In this document: positions 2,884-45,063 of the stretch, piece after piece
Layout of the letters: every line of letters begins with the position of its first letter
How positions within the stretch are numbered: the stretch's first letter is position 1
Source of the DNA: Haliotis rufescens
Lineage: Eukaryota
Length of the DNA: 64,000 nt
Assembly: GCF_023055435.1 (NCBI RefSeq)
Contig: NW_025964361.1
Span: forward strand, 12,710,001 to 12,774,000
Direction: 5' to 3'
Notes under the pieces: model-generated
What the model was told of the DNA's origin: nothing
Database searches by the model: none
What the model saw: the letters and a program-made list of their open reading frames with translations, nothing else
Translations under genes and position numbers: made by a program

Positions 2884-4020
2884 TTAGCCACTTCTCAGCT
2901 CTTCAAAATATTTTGTAACAGTCTCTAGTATTATCATTCCTTCCAAGTTGTAAATATATAGTTGCCCATTAGCTTCCTCGTCTGAGATACACCCAATGGC
3001 TATTTCATCACCAAATGCTGTTAAAGACATAGCAGCATCATAGTTTTCAGGGCACGTCATTAAAAAAGTATCCAGGTTATTTGTAACATTTCGCATGTAT
3101 ACTCTCAAATCTACAAGACCGTAAATTAGAAGATCTTTCAAAATCACAAGTTGTAACAAATGATGCGGAGCCGAGATGCTCGTAAGTATTTGCGGAATGA
3201 CAGGGGGCTGGTGATTGTATATCACATAATACACATCGTACCTATACCTTCTGTTGACTGTCGTCAATTTGCACCACACGAACATCTTGTCCCTACTTCC
3301 GCCTATAAGATAATTGCTGGCGACTATGTGCTCGTTAACATAGGCAATAACAACTTGGCTTGGATTGTCAATCTCTGTTGCCATCAGTTGCCAGTTGGAA
3401 TCCCGTCCTTGAAAGAAATAGATATGTTTATTCCTTCTGTCATAATAAAGACCGCAGATTTTATCATAGCCCTCACTAACCAGCATTTTTAGAAAACGGC
3501 CATCAAGGGAGTGAAGTCGTATGGTGTAATCATCTGGCTGAACAATCAGAAGACAGGCACGCGAATCCACTGCCCAGTTCATGGGAGAATGTAAGCCAGC
3601 TATGCGTACCCAATTTGTTCCATTTGGGCCCAACACATATAAACCCATTTCAACTGTTTCCTCTCCGAAAAGCAAATCCTTTGAAGAGCCCATTCGAATT
3701 GTGAGCGGGATGCCAGTACATCTGGTTCTTGGGGATAGAGCTGTCCTGTTGGAAGCCACACTTGGACCAACATGAAAAGAAGTATTTGTTTTTGTTGACC
3801 AGTTTCCTTCACTGCTGCTCGGGACAAAAGAACAATTCATAATTCCCGATTCATATACTATCGCACAGATAAAATTGCCAAAGTTCTTGAAGGTACTTTG
3901 TAATAGGTAGTTGTTTGTTTTGCTTTCAAGTTGCAAATGTTTCCATTCAATACATTCAGAAGGAGGCGTTTTAAAGCAGAAACAGGCTACCATCACCACG
4001 ACGTTTCTAAGGCATTTCAT
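2884..4020 (-). CDS. Predicted secreted 378-aa protein with degenerate YWTD/LDL-receptor class B-like beta-propeller, copy 1 (intact)
   Basis: Uninterrupted 378-codon ORF. Hydrophobic N-terminus (MKCLRNVVVMVACFCF). Repeats GLHSPMNWAVDSRACLLIV and IRLHSLDGRFLKMLVSEGYDKICGLYYDRRNKHIYF resemble LDLR-B blades. Several N-x-S/T sites, no TM helix. Same length in three copies. Fold is inferred. Confidence 0.8.
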   Translation of the reverse strand: MKCLRNVVVMVACFCFKTPPSECIEWKHLQLESKTNNYLLQSTFKNFGNFICAIVYESGIMNCSFVPSSSEGNWSTKTNTSFHVGPSVASNRTALSPRTRCTGIPLTIRMGSSKDLLFGEETVEMGLYVLGPNGTNWVRIAGLHSPMNWAVDSRACLLIVQPDDYTIRLHSLDGRFLKMLVSEGYDKICGLYYDRRNKHIYFFQGRDSNWQLMATEIDNPSQVVIAYVNEHIVASNYLIGGSRDKMFVWCKLTTVNRRYRYDVYYVIYNHQPPVIPQILTSISAPHHLLQLVILKDLLIYGLVDLRVYMRNVTNNLDTFLMTCPENYDAAMSLTAFGDEIAIGCISDEEANGQLYIYNLEGMIILETVTKYFEELRSG

Positions 4021-4199
4021 GTTTATGTGTAAGGAGTTGACTATCCAAACGGCGACTTCAGAATAAGTTTCAGGACAGAAGGTCTAGACAGAATATTCCA
4101 ATTAACTATGAAAGCCACAGAAATATATTTTATCAAACAGGACCTTATCAGTGATTTAAAAATAAGCAAAATTCGTTTGCGATTGTTTATGCATTATCA

Positions 4200-4760
4200 T
4201 TAGATCTGATCTCTAGATTTGCAGTCATATGCTCAAAAGAAGAAAGAAGACGAAATAGCTATATACAGCTGTCTTTGCAGTATGTTAACTCAACAACCGA
4301 TGCTGCAGCTGAAACAGCTCTATGCAAACCGTTATCCTCACCATTGTCCCGTACATAGATATCAAAACAACCATCAAGCATATACTCGGGGTCGTATGCA
4401 AAACAAAGGGGAACACCCAGGTGGGAATCAATAAACTTCATTAGTTTAAACCAACAATCGGTCACACCTACATGTACGTGGGTATTCAGTAAAGACATGA
4501 AGACGTCATTTTGCGACGAGGTTCTATTGGACACGATTATCTGTTTTCACAGATGATGACGAACCTCCTAAGTGTATACTTTTTAATGAAAGGTTCACCG
4601 TCAAGCATGTTGTGCTTGACCGCACATGTGTGGTCTTGGCAATTGCAAGGGATTCCCATTATTAAACAGTAAGTCTGAAGGATCTTTTTTCCCCTGTGAG
4701 CGGGCTATCACCATCAACTTCCTGACAAAATTATTCTGTATAATAAATTTTAAATATATA
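4200..4760 (+). mobile_element. Decayed LINE ORF2 C-terminus (Zn-finger region); homologs at ~17720-18290, ~31745-32310, ~45330-45860
   Basis: Plus strand gives NKLH*FKPTIG...VILRRGSIGH...DEPPKCILFNERFTVKHVVLD...LKDLF, matching the I-group RxRIGH...PPxC...TVxH motif. Confidence 0.65.
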
Positions 4761-4966
4761 TGGTAGTTATTAAATTTGCTGTGATGCTTTTTGTCAACAG
4801 AGATCATGGACTGCCAAGGAAGTTAGGAAGTACCGTAAAATTATTATCCCTCTATGTGACACGTAGTTCCTATCATAATCGATGTATCTATAATCAACAC
4901 ATGTTTTAAGCCAACATACTATTAGTCGGTTTTTTGAACATGTTAAATAAATAGCTTTTAAATCGA

Positions 4967-5138
4967 NNNNNNNNNNNNNNNNNNNNNNNNNNNNNNNNNN
5001 NNNNNNNNNNNNNNNNNNNNNNNNNNNNNNNNNNNNNNNNNNNNNNNNNNNNNNNNNNNNNNNNNNNNNNNNNNNNNNNNNNNNNNNNNNNNNNNNNNNN
5101 NNNNNNNNNNNNNNNNNNNNNNNNNNNNNNNNNNNNNN
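4967..5138. other. Assembly gap
   Basis: Run of N. Confidence 1.
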
Positions 5139-5479
5139 AGCAGTTCTATCCTTTAGTGTCTACAATTTTGAGGTACAGTCGATCATGCTGTCTACGAAGA
5201 TTCCAAAGAGCATTAAAGAAGTCAAACGTTGTTTTATCAAGAATACAATATTCGAGGCATTGGTGAAGCTTTCAAAAATGGTTATGGTAGACAGATGGTA
5301 GACAGGTAGACAGGTGGAAGACATTTCCAAATATTTCGCATTACTGATAAAAGTGATGTACGATCGAATTATCACCCAGTTGAATATTTGCAGATCCCCA
5401 GAAAGTTCTTAACGTCCACTTCATACAGCGTTTTTAAGAGATGGCCCATTAGCCAGATTCAGATAATGGGGAAGATTAC

Positions 5480-6944
5480 AATAAAAATGTCTATTCATGA
5501 ACTACATAATGCCCTTGGACATGCTCACGATACTGCTACAGGAGCTGATAACATACATTATCAAGTCCTGAAGCACTTACCAGAATCATGTTAACAATCA
5601 CTGTTGAATATTTTTGATGAAATTTGGACGTCAGGACACTACATGGAAAGATTTACGTGATATTGGATTGCGAGGCCGTTTGCCTTTTTTAAATCCAATT
5701 TTTCAACAGTCAGAAAATTTCAAGTCCGCTTGGGTACGGTGCTGCCCTGTCCCCTCATCATAATCAGGATCAGGGCGTCTCACAGGGCAGTATTTTATCT
5801 GTCATATTCAGCAAAAAGATCAAAAGTTATAATTTATTCAGTTGATGGATAATTTTGTGTGGATGATTTTAATATTGCCTGTCGTGGTAAAAACATGGAT
5901 ACTATTGAAAGGCAACTCCAATTATGTTCAAATACAGTTCATAAATGGCCACTCGAAAATGGTTTAAAGTTTTCTAAAACTGTTGCCACTGCCACTGTCA
6001 TTGGATCCAGGACTATCTCATCCAGATTACCTGATAGCTGTTCTATTTTAACAGAAGAAGCAAATGCTATTTTAACAGCTCTTAAATATATCAACAGCCA
6101 AACTAAACATAAACAGTTCATATTTTTCAGATTCTCTTTCTTGCCTCCGGGCTATTAAAAAACTTGTCTTGCTCACATCCACCTTTAATTAAAATTGTTG
6201 AATTCTTTAATTAATTTGCTTCTGGCCAATACGACATCGTTTTCTGTTGGTTACCCAGCCATGCTGGTATCATATGTAACACAGTGGCCGATGCTGCTGC
6301 AAAAGCAGCACTCAACAAATCTGTGACACCACTTCTAATCCCACACAGTGACGATAATCCTGTTATTACTTGCCCGTGAAGAGATCACCCGTTTAATAAA
6401 CATACAGTTGTGTTACAGATTGTTTATTACCAAAACGCGTGCTTTTGTACTCTCAGAACACGTTTCACGAACAAATATTGAAAGCTCACAACATCCCTTG
6501 GCTTATTCAACGACATTGCATGTGGAGAGGAGCTTATGCACACTTGATAACCCCAGCAACCTTGTTGCCAGGCTGACGTCACATGACACTGTTTCGCCGA
6601 TGGATCTTGCAACAAAATTCCACAAATTACTCGCTTTCGCTCATCAGATACCACAACTATTCACTCGTTTCATAAACTTAGTATCACATGGGAGCTCGTT
6701 TAGTATTCTCTCTTTATTAGATATTACATTCGAGATCTGATGCATTTTTATATTATGTTAACTTATACTTTCTGCTTTTAAATGTTCTCAACTAGTTTTA
6801 AATCAAATCGGTGATATTCTAGTTAATGTACTGTCCATGGATGACAGGTTTTTATTTGTCTAAATATATGTATTACTAATGTATAACTTTTCGTCACGAT
6901 ATGGCTGAAATATTGCCGATGTGACGTTAAATATGAACTCACTC
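5480..6944 (+). mobile_element. Internally deleted I/Nimb-type LINE (RT pieces, RNase H, 3' tail); homologs at ~18900-20684 and ~32985-34805
   Basis: GADNIHYQVLKHLP, VDDFNIAC, RLPDSCSILTEEANAI, FCWLPSHAGI. The 3' end reads gatatggctgaaatattgccgatgtgacgttaaa...ctcactc. Confidence 0.8.
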
Positions 6945-8645
6945 TATATGTTTTATGTCAGGTCGACATTTGGCCTGACCATTTGCCAAGGAGGTGATGG
7001 AAAGAGTTGAGAGGGAGCTATATCTTAACACTAGTATTAGAAGCAGAAATGACAGATTTAATTCTGAATCCAAGTGTTGAAACAAGAGACTTTTGTAAAT
7101 AACCCTTACATTCTCCAGTATAGACGATGGAGCCGTAATCAAATTGGTAAGGGTTGTCTGATCTCCTCCCTACTTTGAATTAGATACAACTTTCAACAAA
7201 TCGGATGACATCAGAAATTTAGATCTAAGCGATTTAATGTGTAGTAAGAAAATTAACTGGCCATCAAAGATCAGTCCCAAGAATTTGGCCTTCTCTACAA
7301 CTTTGATAGTAAATAATTCAGGGTCCTTATGTGGCTCATATTTTCTCCACAAATGTATGTATAGTTAGTTTTTTATTATCTAAAAGTGTCTGAATACATG
7401 GTTTAGGCAAATGCTTCAAAAACTGATAATGGATATTATCTTCCCCTTCTGCAGTATTGAGAACGTGTTGTTTCACCGTAAGTTTTCCTTTAAATAAAAT
7501 AGATGAATTGAGGTAAAATGATTTATTCAGATGCAGTGTGTGAATCAATAAACATTTCGATTCAGTTTATCATGTAAACACAATAATAATAATCATAAAT
7601 TATATTATTACAGATAACGTCTTGGTTTCTTATAGCATAACTACTCATGGTAAGCAGAATATAAATCAACAAGCATTTCGCTTCAACTAATCCAATAAAC
7701 ATATCACATAATCATACATTACATTATATATATATACGTAAATAATATCAGAATGGATCTTTAACAAGCGGTACAATAACCACACAACACACATGATTCA
7801 CCATGCCAATGTCACCTTGAAATGATGCAACATTAATGATGGACGTATTTGTAGATGTATTACGGTAATGCAGTTACGCGCATTTACCGTAGTTCTTCTA
7901 ATGCAAGTGTTACTAGATATTTTATGCAGAGCTCGTTTTCGAGCGTTTTGCATTTGACCTCAAACATTCAGTTACAAGTATTGCATCATTTTCTTTAAAG
8001 AACAAAGCTGAGTCCAGCATTACTGTTAGCAACTACTCTACACATATTCACAACATGACAAATTTTACGTTTGATAATTGCACTAGATTTCTTATTTATC
8101 AAACTGTTATCAAGAATTTGATCAGGAATAATTATTTTCATATTTGGGTGATCGAAATTACACTAGAACCTGTACAAGTGACTCATATTGTTGGAATAGT
8201 ACACACTTTTTAAAGTTCCTAAAACTTTATAGAAGATTCAGAAATACATTGAGCAATAACCTTACAATGAAGCAGCGCATGTAGATCAAATTATGCAATG
8301 TTTCAGAAATCATAGACAATAATAATCAAGATATTTGAAAAGAACCATTGAAACAATCTAAGACAACAATCATAAAACACATTCAACATATATGAAAACG
8401 ACCATTGAAACACCGCAAGAAAGTGTCTTACCCTGAAATAAAATAGATAAATTGAGGATATATAATGACATCAGAATTGCTAGCGTTTCAAGATTATATT
8501 CCGATGCAGTGTAAATTGGCGGTCTACTTATGTCTTTCTCTGTTGTTAGATTGAACGTGCGCTTTCTGCATTTTGGTGGGTAGGGGATGTAATAAATGAA
8601 TATAATAAAGTGGAAAAAGCTGGGCTTGGGTTGGTGGGGGTTGGG

Positions 8646-9348
8646 TCAAGCGCTTGAAGCACGGCGTCGGCTGGCGAGCCTGTGTGTTGAGAAAGGCCCT
8701 TCGAGCGTCTGGTGGAGTTGCCTTGCCAGGAGCTTCATTGCTGTGCTCTCTTCCTGTTCACTGATGGCCTTGTACAATATGCCGGTAAGCTGGGCGGCTA
8801 TGTTGGAGATGTACGCCTGACGTATTATCACAGTGCACCAGGAAATCAAAGAGATCCTTCTAACTGTGGATATCATGCTCGAACCTCTCCTCCATGTACC
8901 ATACCATGACCAGCGGTGGGCGCGTACGAGCGCTCGCGAAGTGTTTACCAAGGCTGTTGTCGAAACGAGGGGCGGGGTTGTCCTTGTGCTGCTCCAGAAT
9001 AAAGTAAGCTATCCGTGACAAATCCATACGGGGATCCTCCTTCTCTCTTGGAGGAAGGGCCACCTCAATCTCCTGTCTGGAGACTGAAGGTGTCTCCTTC
9101 TTTTTATTCTGGGGTCTGGGTTTCTGCATCGGGAGTGACGCAGAGGGAGCCAGTTTGTACTTAACCGTGGACTGAGCCCAAGCCTAGTCCAGGGGCCTCT
9201 TTCTTTGATCGAGATAAAAGATGGTGGAGAATGTTGAGGTGTTCTTTCTCTAGGGCGTCTGGAGGGAGAAGTCGCTAACCCGGTACGTTAGAAGCGGTTC
9301 CAGGATGGCGACTAGCTCCCTCGGTAGGGCCTTGCTAATATCTATCAT
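8646..9348 (-). pseudogene. Decayed GC-rich orphan ORF (~230 codons); homologs at ~23503-24148 and ~36716-37413
   Basis: ATG at 9348 (MIDISKALPRELVAILEPLL) is in frame with MQKPRPQ...FEHDIHS. In-frame stops and a probable frameshift into AYISNIAAQLTGILY...RASSA*. Sharp GC contrast with the flanks. Confidence 0.5.
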
Positions 9349-9369
9349 GATGGGCGCTTGGGGGGTGTC

Positions 9370-9422
9370 AAACTGCACATACTTATATCGTGGAGGGACG
9401 CATAGCAATCTCTGATTGGTTA
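9370..9422 (-). promoter_or_regulatory. CCAAT box plus TATA box upstream of the orphan ORF
   Basis: Minus strand reads aaCCAATcag...gaTATAAgta, ~30 bp apart. Conserved at ~24200-24250, ~37465-37516 and ~38612-38664. Confidence 0.5.
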
Positions 9423-10978
9423 AGTTTCGAAGACATTATTTTAATTTATTGTCACCATTAGTTCCTTTGTTATTCTCATAGGTAACCTAACTTATGTCCA
9501 CCTATAGTGGATTATGGTAATAACAAAACAAAGCCTGGCGTGCATGGCTGTTGGCATGTATAAATTTAAGTCAGTTTCGGGTTCACCGGATTTCTTGTTA
9601 TTGTAAGCAACAGCAGTATTTAGGCAATTCACTGGATCCTAAACTTAAAACGGTACTAACTAGGGGCATTAAAATTAAAATGCCAATTCAGGGAATGTAA
9701 ATGGTACAAAGGTGTTCTCCTATTTGTAGATTCTCAAAGGTTAGCTGCCAATCACACCCTAGAATATTTTCTCTCAACCCCTGATACTTTATGAATACTT
9801 TATGACATTTTATGGAATACAAATCAATGCTGATTAGTCAAACTGCTATGCAATTTTCTTTTTCAAAGGAAATTATGCCTTATTCTGTAAAATTACCATT
9901 GGCTCGGGTAGAACCGCTGGGCTAACCACGCGGTTCAAGATAATTGAGCACTGTTCGACTTTTTTTAACCGAGCGTTCCTAACCAAGCCAATGAAAATAC
10001 TACATCATAAATGAACTGTTTCGATTTGCGTGGTTTTACCAACCGCTAGTCCCTAGCAGTTTGCAGTTGGTGAAACTGCGCCAAACCGCGCACAATGGAA
10101 ACTAAGTCGCCGAACTTTTAAGCATAGTTTTTGTATATAGCATTTTAACCGCCAAGCTAAACGTCCCCCAAACCGCGTGGCAAACCGCGCACATGGAAAC
10201 TCAGCCCAAATGGCGGCGGCTTTTACATAAGCCAGTAAAGCTTGTTTGTCAATCCCCATTCATATATTTATGTATAAAAATCTGTTGAAACAAAATACAT
10301 TGTTAAGCCTGGTTTGTTTGCATTAAAATCAAAACAAAGGAATCTGTAAGGTGTAAAAAGCTTTTACATAAACGAACAAAATACATGGGAGAGAGTAAAT
10401 ACATAATTCTATATAATTTTCTTGAATGGAGCACATGTGAAAAAAAGATAATCCAAGCATATGCGATATTACCGTGTTTAAAGAATTTATATCAGTCATA
10501 TATTTCTAACTTAGATCACCAGTATGTAACCCAGGTAAAGCATGCATATCGGGGAACATTGTAATGTTGGTACAGTTTATCGTGTCTTCGTGCTTTATAA
10601 TTAGCATTACACATTGTCTTTTCATATTCCTCAAGGTTTTAATGTTTATTTGTTTATGTACTTTTTTATTTATTTTATTCTCTCCTTTATTTTTTCTGGG
10701 TTATATATTTATCTAAATATACATTTAGTTACTAGTATGTGTGGGGGTGTTTAACAGATACCTGGTTGCACCATGATATTCAAGCCACTCCCAGGAGAGA
10801 GAGTTTATTGCAGTAAAGGGGCCACCGGCCCATTATACAATACATATTTCATTGATTTTTTCAATTCAATTGGGCGCCATACAATATTATGCATTGGTCA
10901 ATCAAAGTGACAATTAATTAATATTGAGTTGTTTACATCTTTTTTTCATTGACAGGAAAATATATTTCGCTAAGACAT

Positions 10979-12270
10979 TTACAGTGTAGGCATTTTGTGA
11001 CGACAGTAGTTGTTGGAATTTAAAAAGAGTTGGTTTTGTACATAGTATTTCGGTAATAGACTTCTTATATCATTATAGAATGGGCATATCATACAAAAAT
11101 GGTATTCAGTTTCAACACAAGGTACGAAACACAATGGACAGAATCTTTCATTCGCACTTATACCAAGTGTACGTCCGTATTCAATCATAAGTCTATGGTT
11201 TGAACATCTAAATTTAATCAGAGCATTTCTATAAGGATGTACAATGACAAGTGATAGGTATTCTTCAAATTTAAAGACAGTCTTAACAGATTGGTACATT
11301 TTCAATTTAGAATATTTTGACAAATCCTCAAACCACATTTGGTAATCAATCTCTTTACAGCGTTCTTGGAACTCTGACAAAAAGGAAGTGATACAATTAA
11401 CATTTTGGTTTTTCCAAACAAATCCAAAACCATACTTAAATAAAAGCATTTTAACATTATATGCCCAACAACTCTTATCTAATTCAGCTAACCTATATTG
11501 AAAAGAATAGGCCTGCTGTAAAATCACATTATCTTGTTGATAAATTAATCTCAGCCAATACTTAATTATTTTGATGTACATCTTAGCTTTTAATGAAGAA
11601 TATCCAACTTCACCTCTAGCAACAACATTTGGTGTGTTTCTACCAAGACAGAGTAATTGCTTAAAGTAAGTATCATAAACACGGGTTGCGTCTGGCGATG
11701 GATGAAACCCCCAAATTTCAGATCCATAAGTCAACACAGGAAACAATTTAACATAAAAAATATACAGCAATACTTGCAATGATAAATTTCTAAAATTATT
11801 ACATTGGGAGCGCATTGTATTCAAAACCTTGGACATTTGAAAAGACAGAGTTTTCTGTGTTTTATACCAGGAACCACTGCTAGAGAACTGAACACCTAAA
11901 TATTTATAGGAAGGAACTATTTCTAATGGTCTATTGTCAAGATAAAACTTTTCATATTTCCTAAGTCTACCACCTTTTCTAAAAACAACTACTTTTGTTT
12001 TCTCAACATTAACACAGAGGCTCCATTTTTTACAATAAACAGAGAGTTTGTCAAGTCTTTTTTGTAGACCCTTTACTGTACTATCTGGTTTTGCTGTATG
12101 TATTATATCCATTAATGTCTACTTTATCTTCTTTATTCAACCAAGATTCCTCGAAACATGCTATATGATGTTTATTGATAAAATCTAAAGAAAGACTCTT
12201 TTGTATTAATCTCTTGAAACCTTCACAGTTCCACACTGACAGTTTTAGGCTGATATCTGTGCATAATGGA
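10979..12270 (-). pseudogene. RTE-X-like ORF2 remnant (APE N-terminus fused out of frame to RT thumb and C-terminal Zn finger)
   Basis: SVWNCEG...IACFEESW, then a jump at ~12085 to LQKRLDKL...VNVEKTKVVVF, YKYLG, YGSEIWG, KFRCSNHRL, CPLC...EYHF...CPFY. The YADD core is missing. Confidence 0.88.
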
Positions 12271-12284
12271 CGTTGGCCACGCCC

Positions 12285-14463: not shown

Positions 14464-15169
14464 CTACTAGACGTTGTTGATATGAGGAACTTCTCAAAAT
14501 GTTACCTTTGGTGGTAGATTGGTTTTGACGTTATTTCATTTTTTTCTCAGAGCGACAATTCTCTGCTGCTGCACTACACACCGCTAGGTGGCGCCCTCCC
14601 GATATTCTAGCCACTGATATTACATTGATACCATTTTCAAATCGTAGCCTGTATTAAAGAATATATTTTAGATCTTAAATCAGAGTATAACGGACAGCCT
14701 GAGCTGGAGGCGCGCGTGGATATGTTGACAGTTTTTACGTAGTTAGTGTGAAAACCGAATGTTTGCGAGGATTAATAAGATTTCTGAATTCAGTTACAAC
14801 AGTAACCATACAATCATGTATTTGTTGTATGATATATGTCTTATAATTATTTTAGGATGGAAGGTACAGTTACCAAATAAAATATGCTAAAATATCAATC
14901 CATTATGACCATATTTCATAATCTATTTTTAAAATTAACCCTCCTTACATTAAAGATATCTATTTAAAGAATATAGTACTTAAAGACATTGCAACAAACC
15001 GGATAATCAGGGGTGGGGTGGGGGTGGGGTGGGGGGGGGGGGGGGGGGGGGGGGGATTTTATTTCAGAACAGATTCACCTGGGGGGAATCTGTACCGGTA
15101 TAAAATCTCCGGTGGGAGAATTTGTACAGGGGAGAGTTTATACCGGGACGCCGCATTCAGGCTGACTGC

Positions 15170-16350: not shown

Positions 16351-16406
16351 ACTACTTGCCTGCTATTGTAGGCACTTACTCTAAGCACACTCCTCCAGAC
16401 ACCACT

Positions 16407-32517: not shown

Positions 32518-32649
32518 NNNNNNNNNNNNNNNNNNNNNNNNNNNNNNNNNNNNNNNNNNNNNNNNNNNNNNNNNNNNNNNNNNNNNNNNNNNNNNNNNNN
32601 NNNNNNNNNNNNNNNNNNNNNNNNNNNNNNNNNNNNNNNNNNNNNNNNN
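32518..32649. other. Assembly gap at the homologous position to the first gap
   Basis: Run of N. Confidence 1.
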
Positions 32650-35600: not shown

Positions 35601-37413
35601 TCAGTTTATCATATAAACACAAAACTAATAATCGTAAATTATATTATTACAGATAACGCCTTGGTTTCTTATAGCATAACTACTCATGGTTAGCAGAATA
35701 TAAATCAATAAGCATTTCGCTTCAACTAATCCAATAAACATATCAAATAATCATACATTACATTATATATATATACGTAAATAATATCAGAATGGATCTT
35801 TAACAAGCGGTACAATAACCACACAACACATATGATTCACCATGCCAATGTCACCTTGAAATGATGCAACATTAATGATGGACGTATTTGTAGATGTATT
35901 ACGGTAATACAGTTTCGCGCATTTACCGTAGTTCTTCTTATGCAAGTGTTACTAGATATGTTATGCAGAGCTCGTATACGAGCGTTTTGCATTTAACCTC
36001 AGACATTCAGTTACAAGTATTGCATCATTTTCTTTAAAGAACAAAGCTGACTGACTATTTAGTCCATATATAAGTCCAGCATTACTGTTAGCAACTACTC
36101 TACACATATTCACAACATGACAAATTTTACGTTTGATAATTGCACTAGATTTCTTATTTATCAAACTGTTATCAAGAATTTGATCAGGAATAATTATTTT
36201 CATATTTTGATGATCGAAATTACACTAGAACCTGTACAAGTGACTCATATTGTTGGAATAGTACGCATTTTTTTAAAGTTCCTAAAATTTTATAGAAGAT
36301 TCAAAAATTACATTAAGCAATAACCTTACATTGAAGCAGCGCATGTAGATCAAATTATACAATGTTCCAGAAATCATAGACAATAATAATCAAGATATTT
36401 GAAAAGAACCATTGAAACAATCTAAGACAACAATCATAAAACACATTCAACATATATGAAAACGACCATTGAAACACCGGATGAAAGTGTCTTACCCTGA
36501 AATAAAATAGATGAATTGAGGATAAATAATGACATCAAAATTGCTAGCGTTTCAAGATTATATTCCGATGCAGTGTGGTCTACTTATGTCTTTCTATGTT
36601 GGAGATTGAACGTGCGCTTTCTGCATTTTGGTGGGTAGGGGATGTAATAAATGAATATAATAAAGTGGAAAAAGCTGGGCTTGGGTTGGTGGGGCTTGGG
36701 TTGGTGGGGGTTGGGTCAAGCGCTTGAAGCACGGCGTCGGCTGGCGAGCCTGTGTGGTGACAAAGGCCCTTGGAGCGTCTGGTGGAAATGCCTGGCCAGG
36801 AGCTTCAGGGCTGTGCTCTCTTCCTGTTCACTGAGGGTCTGGTACAATATTCCGGTCAGCTGGGCGGCTGTGTTGGAGATGTACGCTGGACTTATTATCA
36901 CAGTCCACCAGGAAATCAAAGAAATCCTTCTAACTGTGGATATCATGCTCGAACCTACCCCTCCATGTACCATACCATGACCAGCGGTAGTCGCAGACGA
37001 GCGCTCGCGTATGGTTTACCAAGGCTGTTGTCGATAGGAGGGGTGGGGTTGTCCTTGTGCTGCTCCAGAATAAAGTAAGCTATCCGTGACAAATCCATAC
37101 GGGGATCCTCCTTCTCTCTTGGAGGAAGGGTCACCTCAATCTCCTGTCTGGAGACTGAAGGTGTCTCCTTCTTTTTAATCTGGGGTTTCTATATCGGGAG
37201 TGACGCAGAGGGAGCCAGTCTGTACTTAACCGTGGACTGAGCCCGAGCCTAGTGCAGAGGCCTCTTTCTTTGATCGAGATCAAAGATGATGGAGAATGTT
37301 GAGGTGTTCTTTCTCTAGGACGTCTGGAGGGAGAAGTACCTAACCCGGTACGTTAGAAGCGGTTCCAGGATGGAGACTAGCTCCCTCGGTAGGGCCTTGC
37401 TGATATCTATCAT

Positions 37414-39716
37414 GATGGGCGCTTGGGGGGTGTCCAAGCCATGTGTGTGGTCACTTGGCACTCAAACTGCACATACTTATATCGTGGAGGGACGCATAGC
37501 AATCTCTGATTGGTTAAGTTTTGAAGACATTAATTAATTTATTGTCACCATTAGTTCCTTTGTTATTTTATGTATTGTTCCTGGTTGATACCATATTCTC
37601 ATAGGTAACCTAACTTATGTCCACCAATAGTAGATTATGGTTATAACAAAACAAAGCCTGGCGTGTAAGGCTGTTGGCATGTATACATTTAAGTCAGTTT
37701 CGGGTTCACCGGATTTCTTGTTTTTGTAAGCAAAAGCAGTATTTAGGGCATTTCACTGGATCCTAAACTTAAAACGGTACTAACTAGAGGCATTCAAATT
37801 AAAATGCCAATTTAGGGAATGTAAGTGGTACAAAGGTGTTCTCCTATTTGTAGATTCTCAAAGGTTAGCTGCCAATCACACCCTAGAAGTCCCCCCCCGA
37901 TTATTTATACAGACGTGTCATGCAGTTCAATAATTTTATGTGTATTAAATGCTTATGTTATGCAGTGTCTGTGGGGTATTTTGTGATAGACCTAAATACT
38001 AGATAAGGAAACGTATGTGGAAAGAATGTATTCAGCTGTAGATTCCGGTCATCTGGCTACAAATCCTGTGATGTATTAATGGTTGAAGTATTTTGATCTG
38101 AACAGTCCGAATGTTTATAACTAAAATTTTGGAATTGAATACAGTGACAAAGTCTTATATCAATATGTGGACTCATAAATATTGGTTTTATTTTTAACTG
38201 AGATATGATATTTTCTTTACCATTGCTTTACCATTCATTGTACCATTCTAAACCATGTGAATGTTGTAATATCAGTCAATCGGGTGAGAAAACAGCCCAA
38301 TCCTCGCTCTATAAAGGACTATGTCACTCATTTTGCAAGTTGAAATGACCCCTAATACTTTATAAATACTTTATGACAGTTTATGGAGTACAAATCAATG
38401 CTGATTAGTCAAACCGCTATGCAATTTTTTTTTCAAAGGAAAGTATGCCTTATTCTGTAAAATTACCATTGGCTCGGGCATAACCGCTGGGCTAACCACG
38501 CGGTTCAAGATAATTGAGCACTGTTCGACTTTTTTTAACCGAGCGTTCCTAACCGCGCCAAGATGGGCGCTTGGGGGGTGTCCAAGCCATGTGTGTGGTC
38601 ACTTGGCACTCAAACTGCACATACTTATATCGTGGAGGGACGCACAGCAATCTCTGATTGGTTAAGTTTTGAAGACATTAATTAATTTATTGTCACCATT
38701 AGTTCCTTTGTTATTTTATGTATTGTTCCTGGTTGATACCATATTCTCATAGGTAACCTAACTTATGTCCACCAATAGTGGATTATGGTAATAACAAAAC
38801 AAAGCCTGGCGTGCATGGCTGTTGGCATTTATAAATTTAAGTCAGTTTCGGGTTCACCGGATTTCTTGTTTTTGTAAGCAAAAGCAGTATTTAGGCATTT
38901 CACTGGATCCTAAACTTAAAACGGTACTAACTAGAGGCATTCAAATTAAAATGCCAATTTAGGGAATGTAAGTGGTACAAAGGTGTTCTCCTATTTGTAG
39001 ATTCTCAAAGGTTAGCTGCCAATCACACCCTAGAAGTCCCCCCCCCCCCCCCCGATTATTTATACAGACGTGTCATGCAGTTCAATAATTTTATGTGTAT
39101 TAAATGCTTATGTTATGCAGTGTCTGTGGGGTATTTTGTGATAGACCTAAATACTAGATAAGGAAACGTATGTGGTAAGAATGTATTCAGCTGTAGATTC
39201 CGGTCATCTGGCTACAAATCCTGTGATGTATTAATGGTTGAAGTATTTTGATCTGAACAGTCCGAATGTTTATAACTAAAATTTTGGAATTGAATACAGT
39301 GACAAAGTCTTATATCAATATGTGGACTCATAAATATTGGTTTTATTTTTAACTGAGATATGATATTTTCTTTACCATTGCTTTACCATTCATTGTACCA
39401 TTCTAAACCATGTGAATGTTGTAATATCAGTCAATCGGGTGAGAAAACAGCCCAATCCTCGCTCTATAAAGGACTATGTCACTCATTTTGCAAGTTGAAA
39501 TGATCCCTGATACTTTATGAATACTTTATGACAGTTTATGGAGTACAAATCAATGCTGATTAGTCAAACCGCTATGCAATTTTTTTTTCAAAGGAAAGTA
39601 TGCCTTATTCTGTAAAATTACCATTGGCTCGGGTAGAACCGCTGGGCTAACCACGCGGTTCAAGATAATTGAGCACTGTTCGACTTTTTTTAACCGAGCG
39701 TTCCTAACCGCGCCAA
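37414..39716 (+). repeat. ~1.15-kb direct tandem duplication (37414-38561 and 38562-39716)
   Basis: gatgggcgcttggggggtg...ttcctaaccgcgccaa occurs twice. Junction aaccgcgccaa|gatgggcgc. Confidence 0.93.
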
Positions 39717-40699
39717 TGAAAATACTACATCATAAATGAACTGTTTCGATTTGCGCGGTTTTACCAACCGCTAGCCCCTAGCGGTTTGCAGTTGGTCAAA
39801 CCGCGCCAAACCGCGCACAATGGAAACTAAGTCGCCGAACTTTTAAGCATACTTTTTGTATATAGCATTTCAACCACCTAGCTAAACGTGCCCCAAACCG
39901 CGTGGCAAACCGCGCACATGGAAACTCAGCCCAAATGGCGGCGGCTTTTACATAAGCCAGTAAAGCTTGTTTGTCAATCCCCATTCATATATTTATGTAT
40001 AAAAATCTGTTGAAACAAAATACATTGTTAAGCCTGGTTTGTTTGCATTAAAATCAAAACAAAGGAATCTGTAAGGTGTAAAAAGCTTTTACATAAAAGA
40101 GCAAAATACATGGGAGAGAGTAAATGCATAATTCTATATAATTTTCTTGAATGGAGCACATGTGAAAAAAAGATAATCCAAGCATATGCGATATTGCCGT
40201 GTTTAAAGAATTTATATCAGTCATATATTTCTAACTTAGATCACCAGTATGTAACCCAGGTAAAACATGCATATCGAGGAACATTGTAATGTTGGTACAG
40301 TTTATCGTGTCTTCGTGCTTTATAACTAGCATTACACATTGTCTTTTCATATTCCTCAAGGTTTTAATGTTTATTTGTTTATGTACTTTTTTATATATTC
40401 TTTTCTCTCCTTTATTTTTTCTGGGCTATATATTTATCTAAATATACATTTAGTTACTAGTATGTGTGGGGTGTTTAACAGAAACCTGGTTGCACCATGA
40501 TATTCTAGCCACTGATATTACATTGATACCATTTTCAAATCGTAGCCTGTATTAAGGAATATATCCGCCCGGGGGAGATTTTATTTCAGAACAGATTCAC
40601 CGGGGAAGAATCTGTACCAGTATAAAATCTCCAGTGGGAGAATTTGTACGGGGGAAAGTTTATGACAGGACACGGGCCGCATTTCAGGCTGACTGCCGA

Positions 40700-43287
40700 C
40701 TTGTATAGGGGATTACCATTATTGGTCAGCGTGTCTATCTAGAAATGACACGACGGCGGTGAACTCTAAAGCAAGTGTTAGCACCATGACAATATCATGA
40801 GCATGTAATGAAAATACTTCATTGTAATCTTCACCATTATTTAGAATCAAAATAAACTCTTTGTCTTTTCCTGTTGTCTCTGATATCTCTGGCTCAGGGA
40901 CATAATTTGTTGATGAAGAATGTTTGGCAAGAGTTTTGCCAAGATTATTTGCAATGGCAGATTTATCAGATATTAAATTATCACTGTTTTTGAGATTTGA
41001 AACTTTTGCCATTTATGCTTTTAACATGTTCAATCCCTTGGACATGGTGGTGCGTGAAGTAATTTTTGAGTCGTTCTTATAAGCACGCGATGCCAGGACA
41101 TAAGTAATTTTTTACATTTTCAAATTGTGAACTGTAGCATGTCGGTGGAAATATTTTCCCACTTTCTTCCTACACTCCGTTGTTTTTTGCAGGCGTTATT
41201 AGATGATGGTTTACGAATATGAGGATTTTCAGAGGACTTTGCAATTGTTTGGTCAGCAATTTCTAGTTGAGCCGAAAACAACTGGATGTGATATTGTGAA
41301 TCTGTGAAATTATAGTTTTTAGTTTTTGAGGACATAACATATTATACAAGGACCAATTGGCTTTCATAAAACTCCACCGTGATGATGAAGGTGGGTCATC
41401 ATTCGCTTTTACAGCTTTTGGGACAGTAGGGAAGTAATCACTTTCACAAAGGTCATCATGCACAGGCCATTCGAACTCATTGTAAACGTTTAACCCGAAA
41501 GAGTCAGGATGTAAAAAGACCCATACATCATTATCAGAAATATAATCTGCAGTGACTTTAACCTTATTGGTAGTAGCTGCACTTCCACAAAGTGGGTTAT
41601 GTCCATTTAAATCGCCCATGATGATGCAGGGCTTTGGGAGCTGATCATGTAGATTCTAAAGATCAAATAGTTGAAGAGTAGATGAAGGTGGGACATACAG
41701 AAAGCACAAAGTCCATGCAGTGTGCAATGTAAGTCGGACAATAACAACTTGAAGATAAGTATTTAAATGAACAGAAGTATGAATGATGTGCTGCCTGACT
41801 AAAATAGCAGAGCCCCCAGACGCGTTATCTCCCGGAGGAGTAAATGAATGATGAGACTTGTACAGCCTTAGGTCCAACGTTTCTCTATGTTTAAGGTACG
41901 CCTCTTGGAGACAGATTGCTGACGGCTTAAAATCTTGTATTAAAAAGTGCAACTCATTAAAATGTGTCCTGAATCCTTGGAAGTTCCACTAAATCAAATG
42001 ATTGGTATTACTCATTAAGGTGGACTAACAGGAGATCGTCTCCTGTCTTCCTTTTTGGGAGAGTGGCCACTTGTACGACCACTTGTGCTCATTTGAAGGG
42101 ACACATATCCTCTAGCGACCATACATGTTGTTGAGCTACACAGGAAGTTTTAGTGTCTTTTGACACTCAGTGTGTTAGATATTTGTTTTTTGGATTGTCA
42201 ACATTATTTCATGCAATGGTTGTGGTTGTTGTTTCTGTTTCTTTGTTGGTGCTGGTGTTGGAGCTGGTGTTGGAGCTGGTGTTGGAGCTGGAGCTGGAGC
42301 TTTGATGACAATTTTAGATACTGGCTTAGGTGTGTCACCTATTGTCCATGACAGATCTGACTGACCTTGTACAGATGCTGTTGTAAACAGAAGCAGAAGA
42401 ATGTTGGATAGTGTTTGAAGGTGAGACTAACTTTGCTGGTAAAGCTGATCTTCTGCTGAGAATTAATTTTTTGCACAATGCCTTGAAACTTATGGTCACT
42501 GCAGTCAGTTGAATAGGACATATGTTTACCCTGACAGTTAGAGCATTGGTTTAGTGCAGGCATTTCCGTCATGACCCATCTCACCACATCTGAAGCAAAT
42601 AGCCTTGCCTGTACATGAATTCTGCCCATGTCCAAATTTCTGGCATTTGAAACATCGAGTTGGTCGTGGAACAGAAATAACCGTTTCATCATCAGTTGAA
42701 TCAAGTTCAGAATCAGAATCAGAAAGTTGCCGGGTTGTTTTTTACACATAGTTGTAGTAACTGTGGTTCAGCAAACCTGCTCCCTGCCCTCCAAGGAGCA
42801 CCAACAAGGGCGATGCCATACGTAAGCAGAATTCCAGCAAATTAACATCATAATGCAAAAATATTATACTCCAGCAAAACAATATAATCTACCATATTGG
42901 TCGAAGAGCTACCGTCTTCTGGGCATACGACTCTCGGCAAAGTTAGAAATTGAAATTATACGTTTGGGATTTAAGTAAAATATCATTTGGCCAAGACTTA
43001 AACAAACTATCACAACATTAAGATAAACTTGTGTGAAACAATAATGACGAACAGGGTTTGGCATGACCAGGCGATTGATATCACCAGGCCCATCCTACCT
43101 CCCGTCAAGGGCAATGTAAGGGTCAAAGTGATGTGTTGGACAAAAAACACTATTGCCGGCTCTGGCGTCCTCAACCATAAGACTTCCTTTCTCTGCCGCC
43201 ACAGTGATGCAACCCACAGCAAACAGGTTGCCCAATTCGCTCGCCTCTTTCGACCAGCAATGGGGTGCAGGGGACACATTCTACCCC
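40700..43287 (-). mobile_element. I/Nimb-type LINE 5' UTR/ORF1/APE, copy in the last unit
   Basis: Homolog of 27330-30365 (ICLQEA, MGDLNGHNPL) with an ORF1 deletion near 42680. Confidence 0.88.
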
Positions 43288-43351
43288 ACTAACCATTTAC
43301 TTGCCTGCTATTACAGGCTCTTACTCTAAGCACACTCCTCCAGACACCACT

Positions 43352-45063
43352 TTAGCCACTTTTCAGCTCTTCAAAATATTTTACAGTCTCTAGTATTATC
43401 GTTCCTTCCAAGTTGTAAACATATACATGCCCATGAGTTTCCTCTTCTGAGATACACACAATGGCTATTTCATCACCAAATGCTGTTAAAGACTAAGCAT
43501 CATCATAGTTTTCAGGGCACTTTATTAAAAACGTATCCAGGTTATTTGTAACGTTTCGCATGTATACTCTCAAATCTACAATACTGTAAATTAGAAGATC
43601 TTTCAAAATCACAAATTGTAACAAATGACGCGGAGCCGAGATGCTCGTAAGTATTTGCGGAATGACAGGGGGCTGGTGATTGTATATATATAGAATACTA
43701 AACGAGTTCCCGTGTAATACCAATTTTATGAAACGAGTGAATAGTTGTGGTATCTGACGATTGGTTTTACAGGGGAGCTAGTTTTGTATTTTATTTATTA
43801 CTTACCTTTTATAACGTTTTTAGAATTACATTGTTGAGTATGAATAGGCTGACACTTACACGATCCACGGCATAGCCCAACTGAGTGTAACAGAATAATA
43901 GATTGTAATTCTAACACCTTGAAAGTTGAAACGTATGAATTTAATACCATTCAACAGTCCACCTTTAGAATTCACAAAATTGTCGTAGGGCTAAGACTAT
44001 CGCAACTCACATACTTTAACAGACTAACGACTGTCGTTGCGATCGCCTTGTTGAACGGGCCTTGCACCTCAAAGTTTACAATAACGTCAAAATAACCGAT
44101 GACGTAATTTGTGGATTTTTGTTGCAAGATCCATCGGCGAAACAATGCCATGTGACGTCAGCCTAGCAACACGGTTGCTGGGGTAATCGAGTGTGCATAA
44201 GCTCCTCTCAGTCCACAAGCAATGTCGTTGAATAAGCCAAAGGATGTGGAGAGCTTTCAATATTTGTTCGTGAAACGTGTTTCGAGAGTACATAAGCACG
44301 CGTTTTTGTATTACACAATGTGTAATACAGCTGTATGTTCATCTTGTTCCTACTTCCGCCTATAAGATAAGTGCTGGTGACTATGTGCTCGTTAACATAG
44401 GCAATAACAACTTTGGTTGGATTGTCAATCTCTGTTGCCATCAGTTGCCAGTTGGAATCCCGTCCTTGAACGAAAATGATATGTTTATTACTTTTGTCAT
44501 AACGAAGTCCGCAGATTTCATCATAGCCCTCACTAACCAGCATTTTTAGAAAACGGCCATCAAGGGAGTGAAGTCGTATGCTGTAACTATCAGGCTGAAC
44601 TATCAGAAGACAGGCACGCGAATCCACTGCCCAGTTCATGGGAGAATGTAAGCCAGATATGCGAAACCCAATTTGTTCCATTCGGGTCCAACACATATAA
44701 ACCCATTTCAACTGTTTCCTCTGCGAAAAGTAAATCCTTTGAAGAGTCCATTCGAATTGTGAGCGGGATGCCAGTACATCTGGATCTTGGGGATAGAGCT
44801 GTCCTGTTAGAAGCCACTCTTGGACTAACATGAAATGAAGTATTTGTTTTTTGTTGACCAGTTTCCTTCACTGCTGCTCGGGAGAAAAGAACAATTCATA
44901 ATTCCCGATTCATATACTATCGCACAGATAAAATTGCCAAAGTTCATGAAGGTACTTTTGTTTTGCTTTCAAGTTGCAAATGTTTCCATTCAATACTTTC
45001 AGAAGGAGGCGTTTTTAAGCAGAAACAGGCTACCATCACCACGACGTTTCTAAGGCTTTTCAT
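43352..45063 (-). pseudogene. Propeller gene copy 4, pseudogene
   Basis: Frameshifting indels near 44958, 44850 and 44665, an in-frame stop at 43493, and a ~650-bp mobile element (43691-44336) replacing ~60 bp of coding sequence. Confidence 0.88.
43691..44336 (-). mobile_element. Same hairpin-ended element inserted in propeller gene copy 4
   Basis: Reverse-complement homolog of ~19805-20449. Confidence 0.8.

What the first reader, a model, noticed from the sequence alone, without database searches (positions are those of the whole stretch)
2884..45063. Tandem array of an orphan secreted beta-propeller gene evolving by birth and death
Seen: a ~13.5-kb unit in which every other ORF is decayed carries one 378-aa single-exon CDS, present in four copies (two intact, two dead). 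Knowledge: YWTD/LDLR-B propellers normally sit in large multi-exon membrane receptors and act as ligand-binding platforms. Inference: this is a free, glycosylated, secreted propeller, perhaps with a vestigial PAN/apple-like N-terminus. It may be an uncharacterised diversified recognition family (immunity, gamete recognition, mucus or shell matrix). I do not recognise the family.
Basis: partly seen in the sequence, partly recalled or inferred. Interest (0 to 1): 0.8.

Follow-up and report, generated by a model that had tools for sequence, protein, structure and literature searches.

The report
Abalone-only free propeller gene array
Red abalone carries four tandem copies (two intact, two broken) of an unannotated single-exon gene for a probably secreted ring-shaped binding protein, part of a fast-evolving family of about two dozen genes found so far only in abalones; whether and where it is expressed is unknown.

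Summary
The window lies in red abalone (Haliotis rufescens, xgHalRufe1.0.p). It carries a bounded tandem array of about 3.5 units of 13.5-14 kb. Four copies of a 378-codon single-exon ORF lie on the minus strand: two intact and two dead.

The N runs lie about 950 bp upstream of the ORFs, not inside them, and are more likely masked stretches than scaffold gaps. I did not fill them.

AlphaFold2 models residues 105-378 as a six-bladed beta-propeller. LRP6, LDLR and ROS1 YWTD propellers are the top structural matches, tied with TolB. Language-model features of an H. rubra homologue and a weak profile match in the correct register also point to YWTD. Pfam Ldl_recept_b does not hit, and no EGF domain follows.

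The PAN/apple idea is not supported. "Orphan" needs qualifying: the genome holds about 24 intact paralogs, and public data hold only five relatives. One is from H. rubra; the other four are unnamed.

The intact copies show no indels (P=0.004) and no stops (P=0.05), so selection appears to maintain them. A patch at residues 320-365 has excess amino-acid changes, and the family's variable zone is residues 298-350.

Expression is untested. The scan had noted other abalone-only propeller families, but not this one.

The parts
1..46013 (.). Tandem segmental array of about 3.5 units of 13.5-14 kb. It begins about 1 kb left of the window.
   Evidence: Self-BLAST and BLAST of the flanking 10-kb pieces.
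2884..4020 (-). Copy 1: intact 378-aa single-exon ORF, made of a signal-peptide-like N-terminus, an unstructured Ser/Thr-rich linker and a six-bladed propeller.
16407..17543 (-). Copy 2: a young pseudogene, 97.9% identical to copy 3. It has TGA at 17499-17501 and TAA at 17349-17351 and no indels.
   Evidence: It carries 17 lineage-specific changes against 6 in copy 3.
30430..31566 (-). Copy 3: intact 378-aa ORF. This is the protein that was modelled.
43352..45063 (-). Copy 4: an old pseudogene in two pieces (43352-43698 and 44340-45063) with frameshifts, a TAG stop and a repeat insertion.
43699..44339 (.). Dispersed repeat inserted into copy 4. Related copies lie at 33887-34465 and 58781-59187.
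30478..30609 (-). Codons 320-363 of copy 3, covering nearly all of the analysed hot patch (codons 320-365): strands 331-336, 339-345 and 351-358 and loops 323-330 and 346-350, with an excess of amino-acid changes. The same patch in copy 1 is 2932-3063.
4967..5138 (.). N run 946 bp upstream of the copy 1 ATG. It lies outside every ORF and was not filled.
   Evidence: The whole primary assembly has only 154 gaps.
32518..32649 (.). N run 951 bp upstream of the copy 3 ATG, at the position homologous to the first N run. It was not filled.
10979..12112 (-). LINE reverse-transcriptase remnant inside a 4.3-kb stretch found only in unit 1.
27860..28552 (-). LINE endonuclease (Exo_endo_phos) remnant shared by units 2 and 3.

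Best explanation
**What it is.** The locus is a genuine tandem gene array in red abalone, most likely made by unequal crossing-over between 13.5-14-kb units. It evolves by birth and death. The inferred branching order is copy 1, then copy 4, then the copy 2/copy 3 pair. Copy 4 died long ago and copy 2 recently; copies 1 and 3 are kept open by selection.

**What it encodes.** The gene has a cleavable-looking signal peptide and a roughly 90-residue Ser/Thr- and sequon-rich region that appears to be unstructured. This is followed by a free-standing six-bladed beta-propeller built from six repeats of about 42 residues, in the same phase as YWTD (LDL-receptor class B) repeats. The propeller has diverged so far that no HMM recognizes it.

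**How it most likely works (inferred).** It is an extracellular, disulfide-bonded, probably glycosylated binding module. Its specificity would be set by a fast-changing patch on repeats 5-6, chiefly loops 323-330 and 346-350, which must lie on the same face of the propeller. The tandem copies would then offer slightly different binding surfaces, giving a small germline recognition repertoire for microbes, gametes or matrix ligands.

**Shown versus inferred.** Shown here: the array, the lesions, the fold, the family and its taxonomic restriction, and the selection signals. Inferred: secretion, glycosylation, binding function and the duplication mechanism.

**Confidence.** It is about 0.8 for the structural and evolutionary part and about 0.45 for the binding/recognition role. 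The single figure given is a compromise between the two.
For: **Array and lesions.**

**Genome identity and assembly quality.** G000 has 1,334,454,214 bases. That equals the published primary assembly size (1,334,471,355) minus the 17,141-bp mitochondrion. The assembly is HiFi/hifiasm, with heterozygosity of 1.37% and 154 gaps in total (PMC9709998).

**Fold.**
- The AlphaFold2 model built on 21 family sequences has pLDDT of about 85 over residues 100-378.
- The top Foldseek hits are all six-bladed propellers: LRP6, ApoER2, LRP4, Keap1, TolB and SAKe6.
- VIA-align gives Z 20.5, rmsd 3.3 and 252 aligned residues to the LRP6 E4 propeller. Most of the top 50 are YWTD propellers.

**YWTD affinity.**
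- Language-model features of the homologue P0003 give Ldl_recept_b clusters at 0.91, with 176 shared features and 26 of 30 hits.
- hhalign against this genome's own YWTD repeats aligns in the expected register, at E 0.06 and 0.04. One of 40 and one of 60 column shuffles scored higher.

**Selection keeps the intact copies open.**
- The flanks of units 1 and 3 carry 10 indel events in 2,038 columns, and the CDS carries none (P=0.004).
- The chance of no stop arising in 62 substitutions is 0.05.
- Dead copy 2 has accumulated 17 changes against 6 in its intact sister, copy 3 (p=0.03).
- Paralogs with dS of 1.3-1.5 still have intact ORFs, with omega 0.37-0.42.

**Variable patch.**
- Codons 320-365 carry 18 nonsynonymous and 2 synonymous changes.
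- Nonsynonymous density there is 5.3 times that of the rest of the gene (p=1.5e-6), while synonymous density is unchanged.
- Both the copy 1 lineage and the copy 2/3 lineage contributed changes.
- Across nine close pairs in five subfamilies, residues 298-350 are the most variable.

**Extracellular hints.**
- The N-terminal hydrophobic core has a Kyte-Doolittle score of 3.2, and there is no later TM-like stretch.
- Cysteines 63, 101 and 156 are conserved throughout the family.
- One paralog carries a roughly 700-residue Pro/Thr/Gln/Asn mucin-like repeat ahead of the propeller.
Against: - **No evidence of transcription.** No run on record as RNA holds the gene. The two runs guessed to be RNA gave only sparse, low-depth contigs that also cover the upstream non-coding flank, as genomic DNA would. 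The miRNA library laid nothing.
- **Not in public protein data.** None of ten family ORF products is in the 15-billion-protein collection by exact look-up.
- **Overall omega is near neutral.** Between the intact copies it is 0.84, and the CDS as a whole is no more conserved than its flanks.
- **YWTD membership fails Pfam.** The profile-profile evidence is only marginal. TolB and Kelch propellers score within 1-2 Z units of the YWTD propellers.
- **Some paralogs lack an N-terminal hydrophobic segment.** These are L016, P0003 and P0005.
- **The signal peptide is judged by hydrophobicity only.** No SignalP-type predictor was available.
Confidence: 0.6

Rival explanations
1. A decaying or never-functional ORF family. 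All four copies would be drifting neutrally, with copies 1 and 3 simply not yet hit by a disabling mutation.
For: Omega is 0.84-0.92 among the window copies. CDS divergence equals flank divergence. Half of the copies are dead. There is no RNA evidence. The ORF products are absent from public protein collections.
Against: The CDS has no indels, against 5.6 expected (P=0.004), and no stops (P=0.05). The dead sister copy evolves about three times faster. Outside the hot patch, omega is about 0.53. About 24 paralogs keep full-length ORFs at dS of up to 1.5, with omega about 0.4. Nonsynonymous changes are concentrated in one patch while synonymous changes are not.
Confidence: 0.12
2. The propeller is an enzyme rather than a binder. 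It could be a secreted six-bladed hydrolase or lactonase of the SGL/PON/DFPase or sialidase kind.
For: Six-bladed propellers include many secreted hydrolases. Asp152, Asp194 and several Tyr residues are conserved across the family.
Against: There is no Pfam hit to SGL, Arylesterase, NHL, BNR or Str_synth. The top structural matches are binding propellers (YWTD, TolB, Kelch), not hydrolases. Only a handful of propeller positions are conserved family-wide (D152, C156, Y193, D194, Y201, A226 and Y268 in the 12-sequence alignment; C156, D194, Y201 and Y268 at 90% or more in the 21-sequence one), and whether any would form a central site was not checked. Fast surface evolution suits recognition better than catalysis.
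Confidence: 0.1
3. A passenger or coding ORF of a transposable element or endogenous virus, amplified along with the surrounding repeat-rich DNA.
For: The gene is intron-less. The units are full of LINE debris and dispersed repeats. A highly repeated element lies directly 3' of the stop codon, where the DNA run X2 shows a depth of 19,087 at 30287-30403.
Against: The protein has no TE or viral domain. The profile finds only 38 matches in 1.33 Gb, nearly all in local tandem arrays rather than dispersed. The RT and endonuclease remnants are unit-specific insertions, not part of a shared element. The family has signal peptides and conserved cysteines.
Confidence: 0.05
4. An assembly artefact, with haplotypes or collapsed and expanded repeats falsely stacked into an array.
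For: Two N runs lie inside the array. The unit length of about 13.5 kb is close to the HiFi read N50 of 15.8 kb.
Against: The units differ by 3-11%, against a heterozygosity of 1.37%, and each has private insertions and lesions. At most two haplotypes could be stacked, but there are four copies. The assembly is HiFi/hifiasm with the haplotypes separated. An independent 2019 DNA run yields contigs identical to copy 3, alongside many more at 90-99% identity. The stretch's 31-mers occur in DNA runs from several studies and in at least two sister species.
Confidence: 0.03

Closest known systems
YWTD / LDL-receptor class B beta-propellers (Pfam PF00058; LRP5/6, LDLR, LRP4, megalin, nidogen, ROS1/Sevenless)
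   Same: Both are six-bladed propellers of about 265 residues built from six repeats of about 42 residues. The repeat phase is the same: a hydrophobic-aromatic strand, then an I/L...(L/I)(D/N)G strand, then a strand ending in the conserved Asp of 'AVD'. These propellers give the best VIA-align Z (20.5) and the best Foldseek E-values. Language-model features of a family member point to Ldl_recept_b. Both are extracellular.
   Different: Pfam gives no hit, even at E<=10. An own-genome scan with PF00058 lists 58 repeats at E<=1e-5, all above the Pfam cut-off and all on other scaffolds or far from the family loci. The Thr-Asp of the YWTD motif is lost. No EGF module follows, and there are no LDL-A repeats and no membrane anchor. 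The gene has a single coding exon instead of many. It evolves fast (59% amino-acid identity at dS 0.37).
TolB / PD40-type six-bladed propellers (bacterial periplasm)
   Same: The structural scores are practically tied, at Z 20.2, rmsd 3.2 and 243 aligned residues.
   Different: There is no sequence or Pfam PD40 signal in the family. This family is animal and abalone-restricted, and it lacks a TolB N-terminal domain.
Other abalone-only secreted propeller families noted by this scan (s1-807627: coiled-coil stalk plus six-bladed head, about 90 intron-less genes; s1-814381: intron-containing secreted six-bladed propeller)
   Same: All are lineage-restricted, tandemly amplified and reported as secreted six-bladed propellers with one fast-changing surface.
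   Different: Those are unchecked notes on other DNA. The profile of this family finds only 38 places in the genome, so a 90-member family is not the same one at sequence level. No coiled coil is predicted here. I could not compare sequences.
Hypervariable TRIM-NHL arrays of the same genome (s1-816315 and others)
   Same: Both are tandem arrays whose propeller surface varies between paralogs.
   Different: Those proteins are intracellular RING/B-box E3 ligases with NHL repeats. This protein has no RING, B-box or NHL signal and carries an N-terminal signal-like segment.

Membership tests
YWTD / Ldl_recept_b (PF00058) | The Pfam HMM matches above the gathering score (21 bits) | tested here: not met
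   No PF00058 hit for any of 12 family members, even at E<=10. The own-genome PF00058 scan lists 58 repeats at E<=1e-5, all above the cut-off and none at the family's loci.
YWTD / Ldl_recept_b (PF00058) | Six repeats of about 40-45 residues folding into a six-bladed beta-propeller | tested here: met
   The AF2 model has pLDDT of about 85 over residues 100-378, with 23 strands. The top matches are six-bladed propellers, led by LRP6 at Z 20.5.
YWTD / Ldl_recept_b (PF00058) | Profile-level sequence similarity to true YWTD repeats | tested here: inconclusive
   hhalign against 15 single and 7 double YWTD repeats from this genome gave E 0.06 and 0.04 in the correct register. One of 40 and one of 60 column shuffles scored higher. 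Language-model features of the homologue P0003 point to Ldl_recept_b at 0.91 with 176 shared features.
YWTD / Ldl_recept_b (PF00058) | Y-W-T-D consensus on the second strand of each blade | tested here: not met
   The corresponding strands read LLFGE, LLIVQ, IYFFQ, MFVWC, LIYGL and IAIMC. The hydrophobic/aromatic character is kept, but the Thr-Asp is absent (sequence, strands).
YWTD / Ldl_recept_b (PF00058) | The propeller is followed by an EGF-like module and embedded in a multidomain receptor or matrix protein | tested here: not met
   The ORF ends 8 residues after the last long strand, 363-370 (a short closing strand, 374-377, follows). There are no EGF or LDL-A hits.
PAN/apple domain (N-terminus) | A Pfam PAN match and a confident fold with the conserved disulfide core | tested here: not met
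   No PAN hit. Residues 1-95 have pLDDT below 50 in both models. Only two to three conserved cysteines lie there. The N-terminus was not modelled on its own.
Kelch repeat propellers | Kelch Pfam repeats with the GG/Y/W signature | tested here: not met
   No Kelch hit. Structural similarity is slightly below the YWTD and TolB matches (Z 18.8).
Transposable-element or viral protein | A TE or viral domain in the ORF, with dispersed high-copy distribution | tested here: not met
   No such Pfam domain. There are 38 matches genome-wide, mostly in tandem clusters. PHROGs and dedicated TE libraries were not searched.
Secreted glycoprotein | A cleavable signal peptide, no TM segment, and occupied N-glycosylation sites | tested here: inconclusive
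   The hydrophobic core VVVMVACFCL follows MKSLR (Kyte-Doolittle 3.2). The maximum 19-residue hydrophobicity later in the protein is 1.15-1.5. There are six sequons. No dedicated predictor or experiment was available.

The most novel reading that the evidence does not exclude
Abalones have evolved their own germline-diversified extracellular recognition repertoire from free, intron-less YWTD-type propellers. Tandem paralogs would each present a different binding patch on blades 5-6, and the repertoire would serve pathogen, symbiont or gamete recognition. That would be a use of the LDL-receptor propeller not described in any animal.
Probability: 0.2. Interest if true: 0.7.

Novelty: new variant of a known kind. 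Interest (0 to 1): 0.45.

Why it matters
If these genes are expressed, they add an unnamed family to the lineage-specific, fast-evolving secreted proteins of abalone. Abalone is a classic model for rapid evolution of recognition proteins.

They would also show a YWTD-type propeller working alone. It would be stripped of the EGF and LDL-A context it has in receptors, and diverged beyond HMM detection.

The family appears to be missing from public protein data (none of ten ORF products is in the collection by exact look-up) and is invisible to Pfam. Genome-wide screens of abalone immunity, reproduction or disease resistance would therefore probably overlook it.

The locus is also a compact worked example of birth and death. 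It holds one old pseudogene, one young pseudogene and two maintained copies, with a shared hot patch.

Tried and rejected
**Domain and sequence searches**
- Pfam scans of the protein and of 12 family members gave nothing significant. The best hit was an 18-bit WDR36 propeller match.
- An hmmsearch of the family profile against PDB sequences gave nothing.
- Nine other ORFs of 100 aa or more in the array have no Pfam domain.

**Homologue searches**
- An exhaustive profile search of 1.84 billion representative proteins returned only five true relatives. The rest were generic propeller noise: bacterial giant proteins with OLF/DUF5122-type repeats, WD40, FG-GAP and PD40.
- Two word-index homologue searches found only P0001 and P0005.
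- An exact look-up of ten family ORF products found none in the collection.

**Structure**
- The first AF2 model, built on 12 sequences (pLDDT 63), could not separate propeller classes. VIA-wide gave Z of about 15 to every propeller type. A 21-sequence alignment improved the model.

**Expression**
- The single run search and the single read-laying run gave no usable RNA evidence.

- The Atlas could not read new sequences. Only the stored homologue P0003 could be queried.

**Explanations rejected**
- Gene conversion as the cause of the hot patch, because synonymous density is not raised there.
- Stacked haplotypes, because the units diverge far more than the heterozygosity.

**Steps deliberately not taken**
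- I did not read or use the stretch of unit 2 that corresponds to the N runs.
Full report
**1. Where the window comes from**

The window is G000:C583:12,710,001-12,774,000, in a genome of 1,334,454,214 bases in 615 sequences. The published red abalone primary assembly xgHalRufe1.0.p has 616 scaffolds and 1,334,471,355 bp, including a 17,141-bp mitochondrial genome. The difference is exactly the size of G000 (PMC9709998). I therefore take the genome to be Haliotis rufescens.

The assembly was made with PacBio HiFi reads and hifiasm, with the haplotypes separated. Heterozygosity is 1.37%, and the whole primary assembly has 154 gaps.

**2. The N runs (tested first, as asked)**

- The runs at 4967-5138 and 32518-32649 lie 946 and 951 bp upstream of the ATG of copies 1 and 3. 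No ORF discussed here crosses them, so no reading frame depends on them.
- They sit at exactly homologous positions. The unit 1 / unit 3 alignment stops at 4966/32515 and resumes at 5143/32650.
- Both sides are collinear with unit 2, which has no N run there.
- With 154 gaps in 1.33 Gb, two true scaffold gaps within 28 kb at homologous places would be very unlikely. They are more probably masked stretches.
- I did not fill them and did not read the corresponding letters of unit 2.

**3. The observation**

A 1,137-nt ORF occurs four times on the minus strand.

| Copy | Coordinates | State |
|---|---|---|
| 1 | 2884-4020 | Intact, 378 aa |
| 2 | 16407-17543 | 97.9% identical to copy 3, no indels; TGA at codon 15 and TAA at codon 65 |
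| 3 | 30430-31566 | Intact, 378 aa |
| 4 | 43352-43698 plus 44340-45063 | Dead, many lesions |

Copy 4 carries these lesions:
- a 16-bp deletion;
- two 1-bp insertions;
- a 641-bp dispersed-repeat insertion replacing 50 nt of CDS;
- a 1-bp deletion;
- a TAG stop;
- a 3-bp deletion.

Self-BLAST shows units mostly 89-97% identical, with periods of 13.5, 14.0 and about 13 kb. The repeat starts about 1 kb left of the window and ends near 46.0 kb. The genome has no further close copy nearby.

The rest of each unit is repeat debris. It includes LINE RT and endonuclease remnants that are private to one or two units.

**4. Not an artefact, not a transposon**

- The units differ by 3-11%, several times the heterozygosity, and each has private insertions.
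- An independent DNA run gives contigs identical to copy 3, together with many at 90-99% identity.
- DNA runs of several studies, and of at least two other organism labels, hold the stretch.
- The protein has no TE or viral domain.
- The family profile finds only 38 places in 1.33 Gb, nearly all in local tandem clusters.

**5. The family**

The own-genome searches show about 24 intact, full-length, single-ORF paralogs of 361-386 aa:

- two at C583:47.2 and 47.4 Mb, 58-59% identical to the window protein;
- a large cluster at C605:21.02-21.16 Mb, with at least 14 copies in two interleaved subtypes;
- single genes at C605:44.86 and 14.83 Mb, C124:13.74 Mb, C57:24.76 Mb and C301:3.42 Mb;
- three identical copies on the small scaffolds C17, C464 and C542.

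One member, at C301:3.997 Mb, is an open frame of 1,072 codons. In it, a Pro/Thr/Gln/Asn-rich tandem repeat of about 700 residues precedes the propeller.

In public data, an exhaustive HMMER search of 1.84 billion representative proteins found only five true relatives:
- One is an "uncharacterized protein" of Haliotis rubra, XP_046562715.1.
- Four are unnamed Logan proteins. Three of these were compared and are 91-92% identical to red abalone paralogs.

None of ten ORF products from this genome is in the 15-billion-protein collection. So the family is known only from abalone, has no name, and appears to be unannotated here.

**6. Fold**

With a 21-sequence family alignment, AlphaFold2 models residues 100-378 at pLDDT of about 85. 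The model has 23 strands. Residues 1-95 fall below pLDDT 50.

- The best Foldseek matches are all six-bladed propellers: LRP6, ApoER2 and LRP4 (YWTD), the Keap1 Kelch domain, TolB, and the designed SAKe6 proteins.
- VIA-align ranks the LRP6 E4 propeller first, at Z 20.5, rmsd 3.3 and 252 aligned residues.
- TolB follows at Z 20.2, ROS1/Sevenless at about 20, and then LDLR, megalin, nidogen and LRP4.
- Kelch scores 18.8. Differences of under 1-2 Z units count as ties.

The sequence divides into six repeats in YWTD phase: 116-156, 157-199, 200-245, 246-297, 298-338 and 339-378. An example stretch is SPMNWAVD-SRAC-LLIVQ-PDSYS-IRLHSLDG-RFLKMLV.

**7. Is it a YWTD propeller?**

Against membership:
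- PF00058 does not hit any member, even at E<=10.
- A PF00058 scan of the genome lists 58 repeats at E<=1e-5, all above the Pfam cut-off. All lie on other scaffolds or far from the family loci.
- The Thr-Asp of the motif is gone, and there is no EGF module.

For affinity:
- YWTD propellers give the best structural scores.
- Language-model features of the H. rubra member point to Ldl_recept_b clusters at 0.91, with 176 shared features and 26 of 30 hits.
- hhalign of the family profile against YWTD repeats cut from this same genome aligns in the expected register, at E 0.06 and 0.04. One of 40 and one of 60 column shuffles scored higher.

My reading is that this is a very divergent, free-standing propeller of the YWTD kind. 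It works like one, but membership is not demonstrable by the family's own HMM.

The proposed PAN/apple N-terminus has no support.

**8. Secretion**

- The N-terminus, MKSLR followed by VVVMVACFCL, scores 3.2 on the Kyte-Doolittle scale.
- No later 19-residue window exceeds 1.5.
- There are six N-x-S/T sequons, four of them in the Ser/Thr-rich linker.
- Cys63, Cys101 and Cys156 are conserved in all members.
- Most paralogs have similar or better signal-like starts, for example MLLLLFLCVNAVA-SQ. Three lack one.
- The mucin-like paralog also points to an extracellular life.
- This remains inference, because no dedicated predictor or experiment was available.

**9. Selection**

Overall omega between copies 1 and 3 is 0.84 (dS 0.065, dN 0.055), and the CDS is as diverged as its flanks. 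Four tests nevertheless argue against neutrality.

1. The flanks of units 1 and 3 carry 10 indel events in 2,038 columns, so 5.6 are expected in the CDS and none is seen (P=0.004). The chance of no stop arising in 62 substitutions is 0.05.
2. Since their split, dead copy 2 has gained 17 changes and intact copy 3 has gained 6 (p=0.03).
3. Outside codons 320-365, omega is about 0.53.
4. Inside those 46 codons there are 18 nonsynonymous and 2 synonymous changes.
   - Nonsynonymous density is 5.3 times that of the rest of the gene (p=1.5e-6), while synonymous density is equal. This argues against a gene-conversion patch.
   - Polarizing with the 47-Mb paralogs and copy 4 shows that both the copy 1 lineage and the copy 2/3 stem changed this patch independently.

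Loops 323-330 and 346-350 are separated by two strands, so they must lie on the same face of the propeller.

Across nine close pairs in five subfamilies, the equivalent of residues 298-350 is the most variable segment. It shows 0.22-0.32 differences per site, against 0.05-0.10 in blades 1-3.

Deeper paralog pairs have omega of 0.37-0.65 with intact ORFs at dS of up to 1.5. The family is therefore fast-evolving but constrained.

**10. Expression**

This is the main gap.

- No run on record as RNA holds the gene.
- Two runs guessed to be RNA gave a few contigs at depth 3-5. These also cover the non-coding upstream flank and match at about 95%, so they look like genomic DNA or other copies.
- A miRNA library laid nothing.

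**11. Verdict**

The array and its birth-and-death state are real. The gene encodes a free, probably secreted, six-bladed propeller of YWTD type, belonging to an unnamed family of about two dozen genes known only from abalone, with a recurrently changing surface patch.

The most likely role is extracellular binding or recognition. The ligand, the tissue and even transcription are unknown.

In this genome the scan has already met several other tandem, lineage-specific propeller families on other DNA. Those are unchecked notes and are not this family by sequence. This locus is therefore one more instance of a pattern rather than a singular oddity. It is moderately interesting, and it is a new variant of a known kind.

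Noticed in passing
G000:C605:21,021,000-21,164,300 (loci L015, L017-L022, L026-L028): This is the family's largest cluster. At least 14 intact single-ORF paralogs lie on one strand at spacings of about 6-21 kb, in two interleaved subtypes of 386 aa and 375 aa (about 41% identical). Recent pairs have omega of 1.2-1.6, based on few changes.
   Followed up: partly
L023:2452-5670 (-) = G000:C301:3,996,951-4,000,169: An open frame of 1,072 codons in which about 700 residues of Pro/Thr/Gln/Asn-rich tandem repeat (mucin-like) precede a propeller of this family. The true start and any upstream exon are unknown.
   Followed up: partly
window 4967-5138 and 32518-32649: The two N runs sit at exactly homologous positions in units 1 and 3. 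Since the whole assembly has only 154 gaps, they look like masked stretches rather than scaffold gaps. I did not fill them and did not read the counterpart in unit 2.
   Followed up: partly
window 49684-51079 and 55839-56989: Two satellite arrays lie outside the gene array: a 27-bp unit in 52 copies (86% matches) and a 23-bp unit in 50 copies (91% matches). The long ORFs listed there are repeat artefacts.
   Followed up: partly
window 24401-24965 versus 25828-26392: A 565-bp inverted duplication at 99.6% identity inside unit 2. A 1.15-kb direct tandem duplication lies at 37411-38561 / 38559-39716 (98%) in unit 3.
   Followed up: no
window 30287-30403: The stretch directly 3' of the copy 3 stop codon is a very high-copy element. 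The DNA run X2 shows a depth of 19,087 there, against about 70-130 over the CDS.
   Followed up: no
G000:C17:48726-49811, C464:14228-15313, C542:2818-3903: Three small scaffolds carry 100% identical copies of one 364-aa paralog. They may be unplaced haplotigs or a very recent duplication.
   Followed up: no
L025:1407-2789 = G000:C301:3,419,906-3,421,288: A family member split into two open frames of 210 and 181 aa, about 200 bp apart. This could be an intron or a frameshift. The Logan protein P0005 matches the first piece.
   Followed up: no
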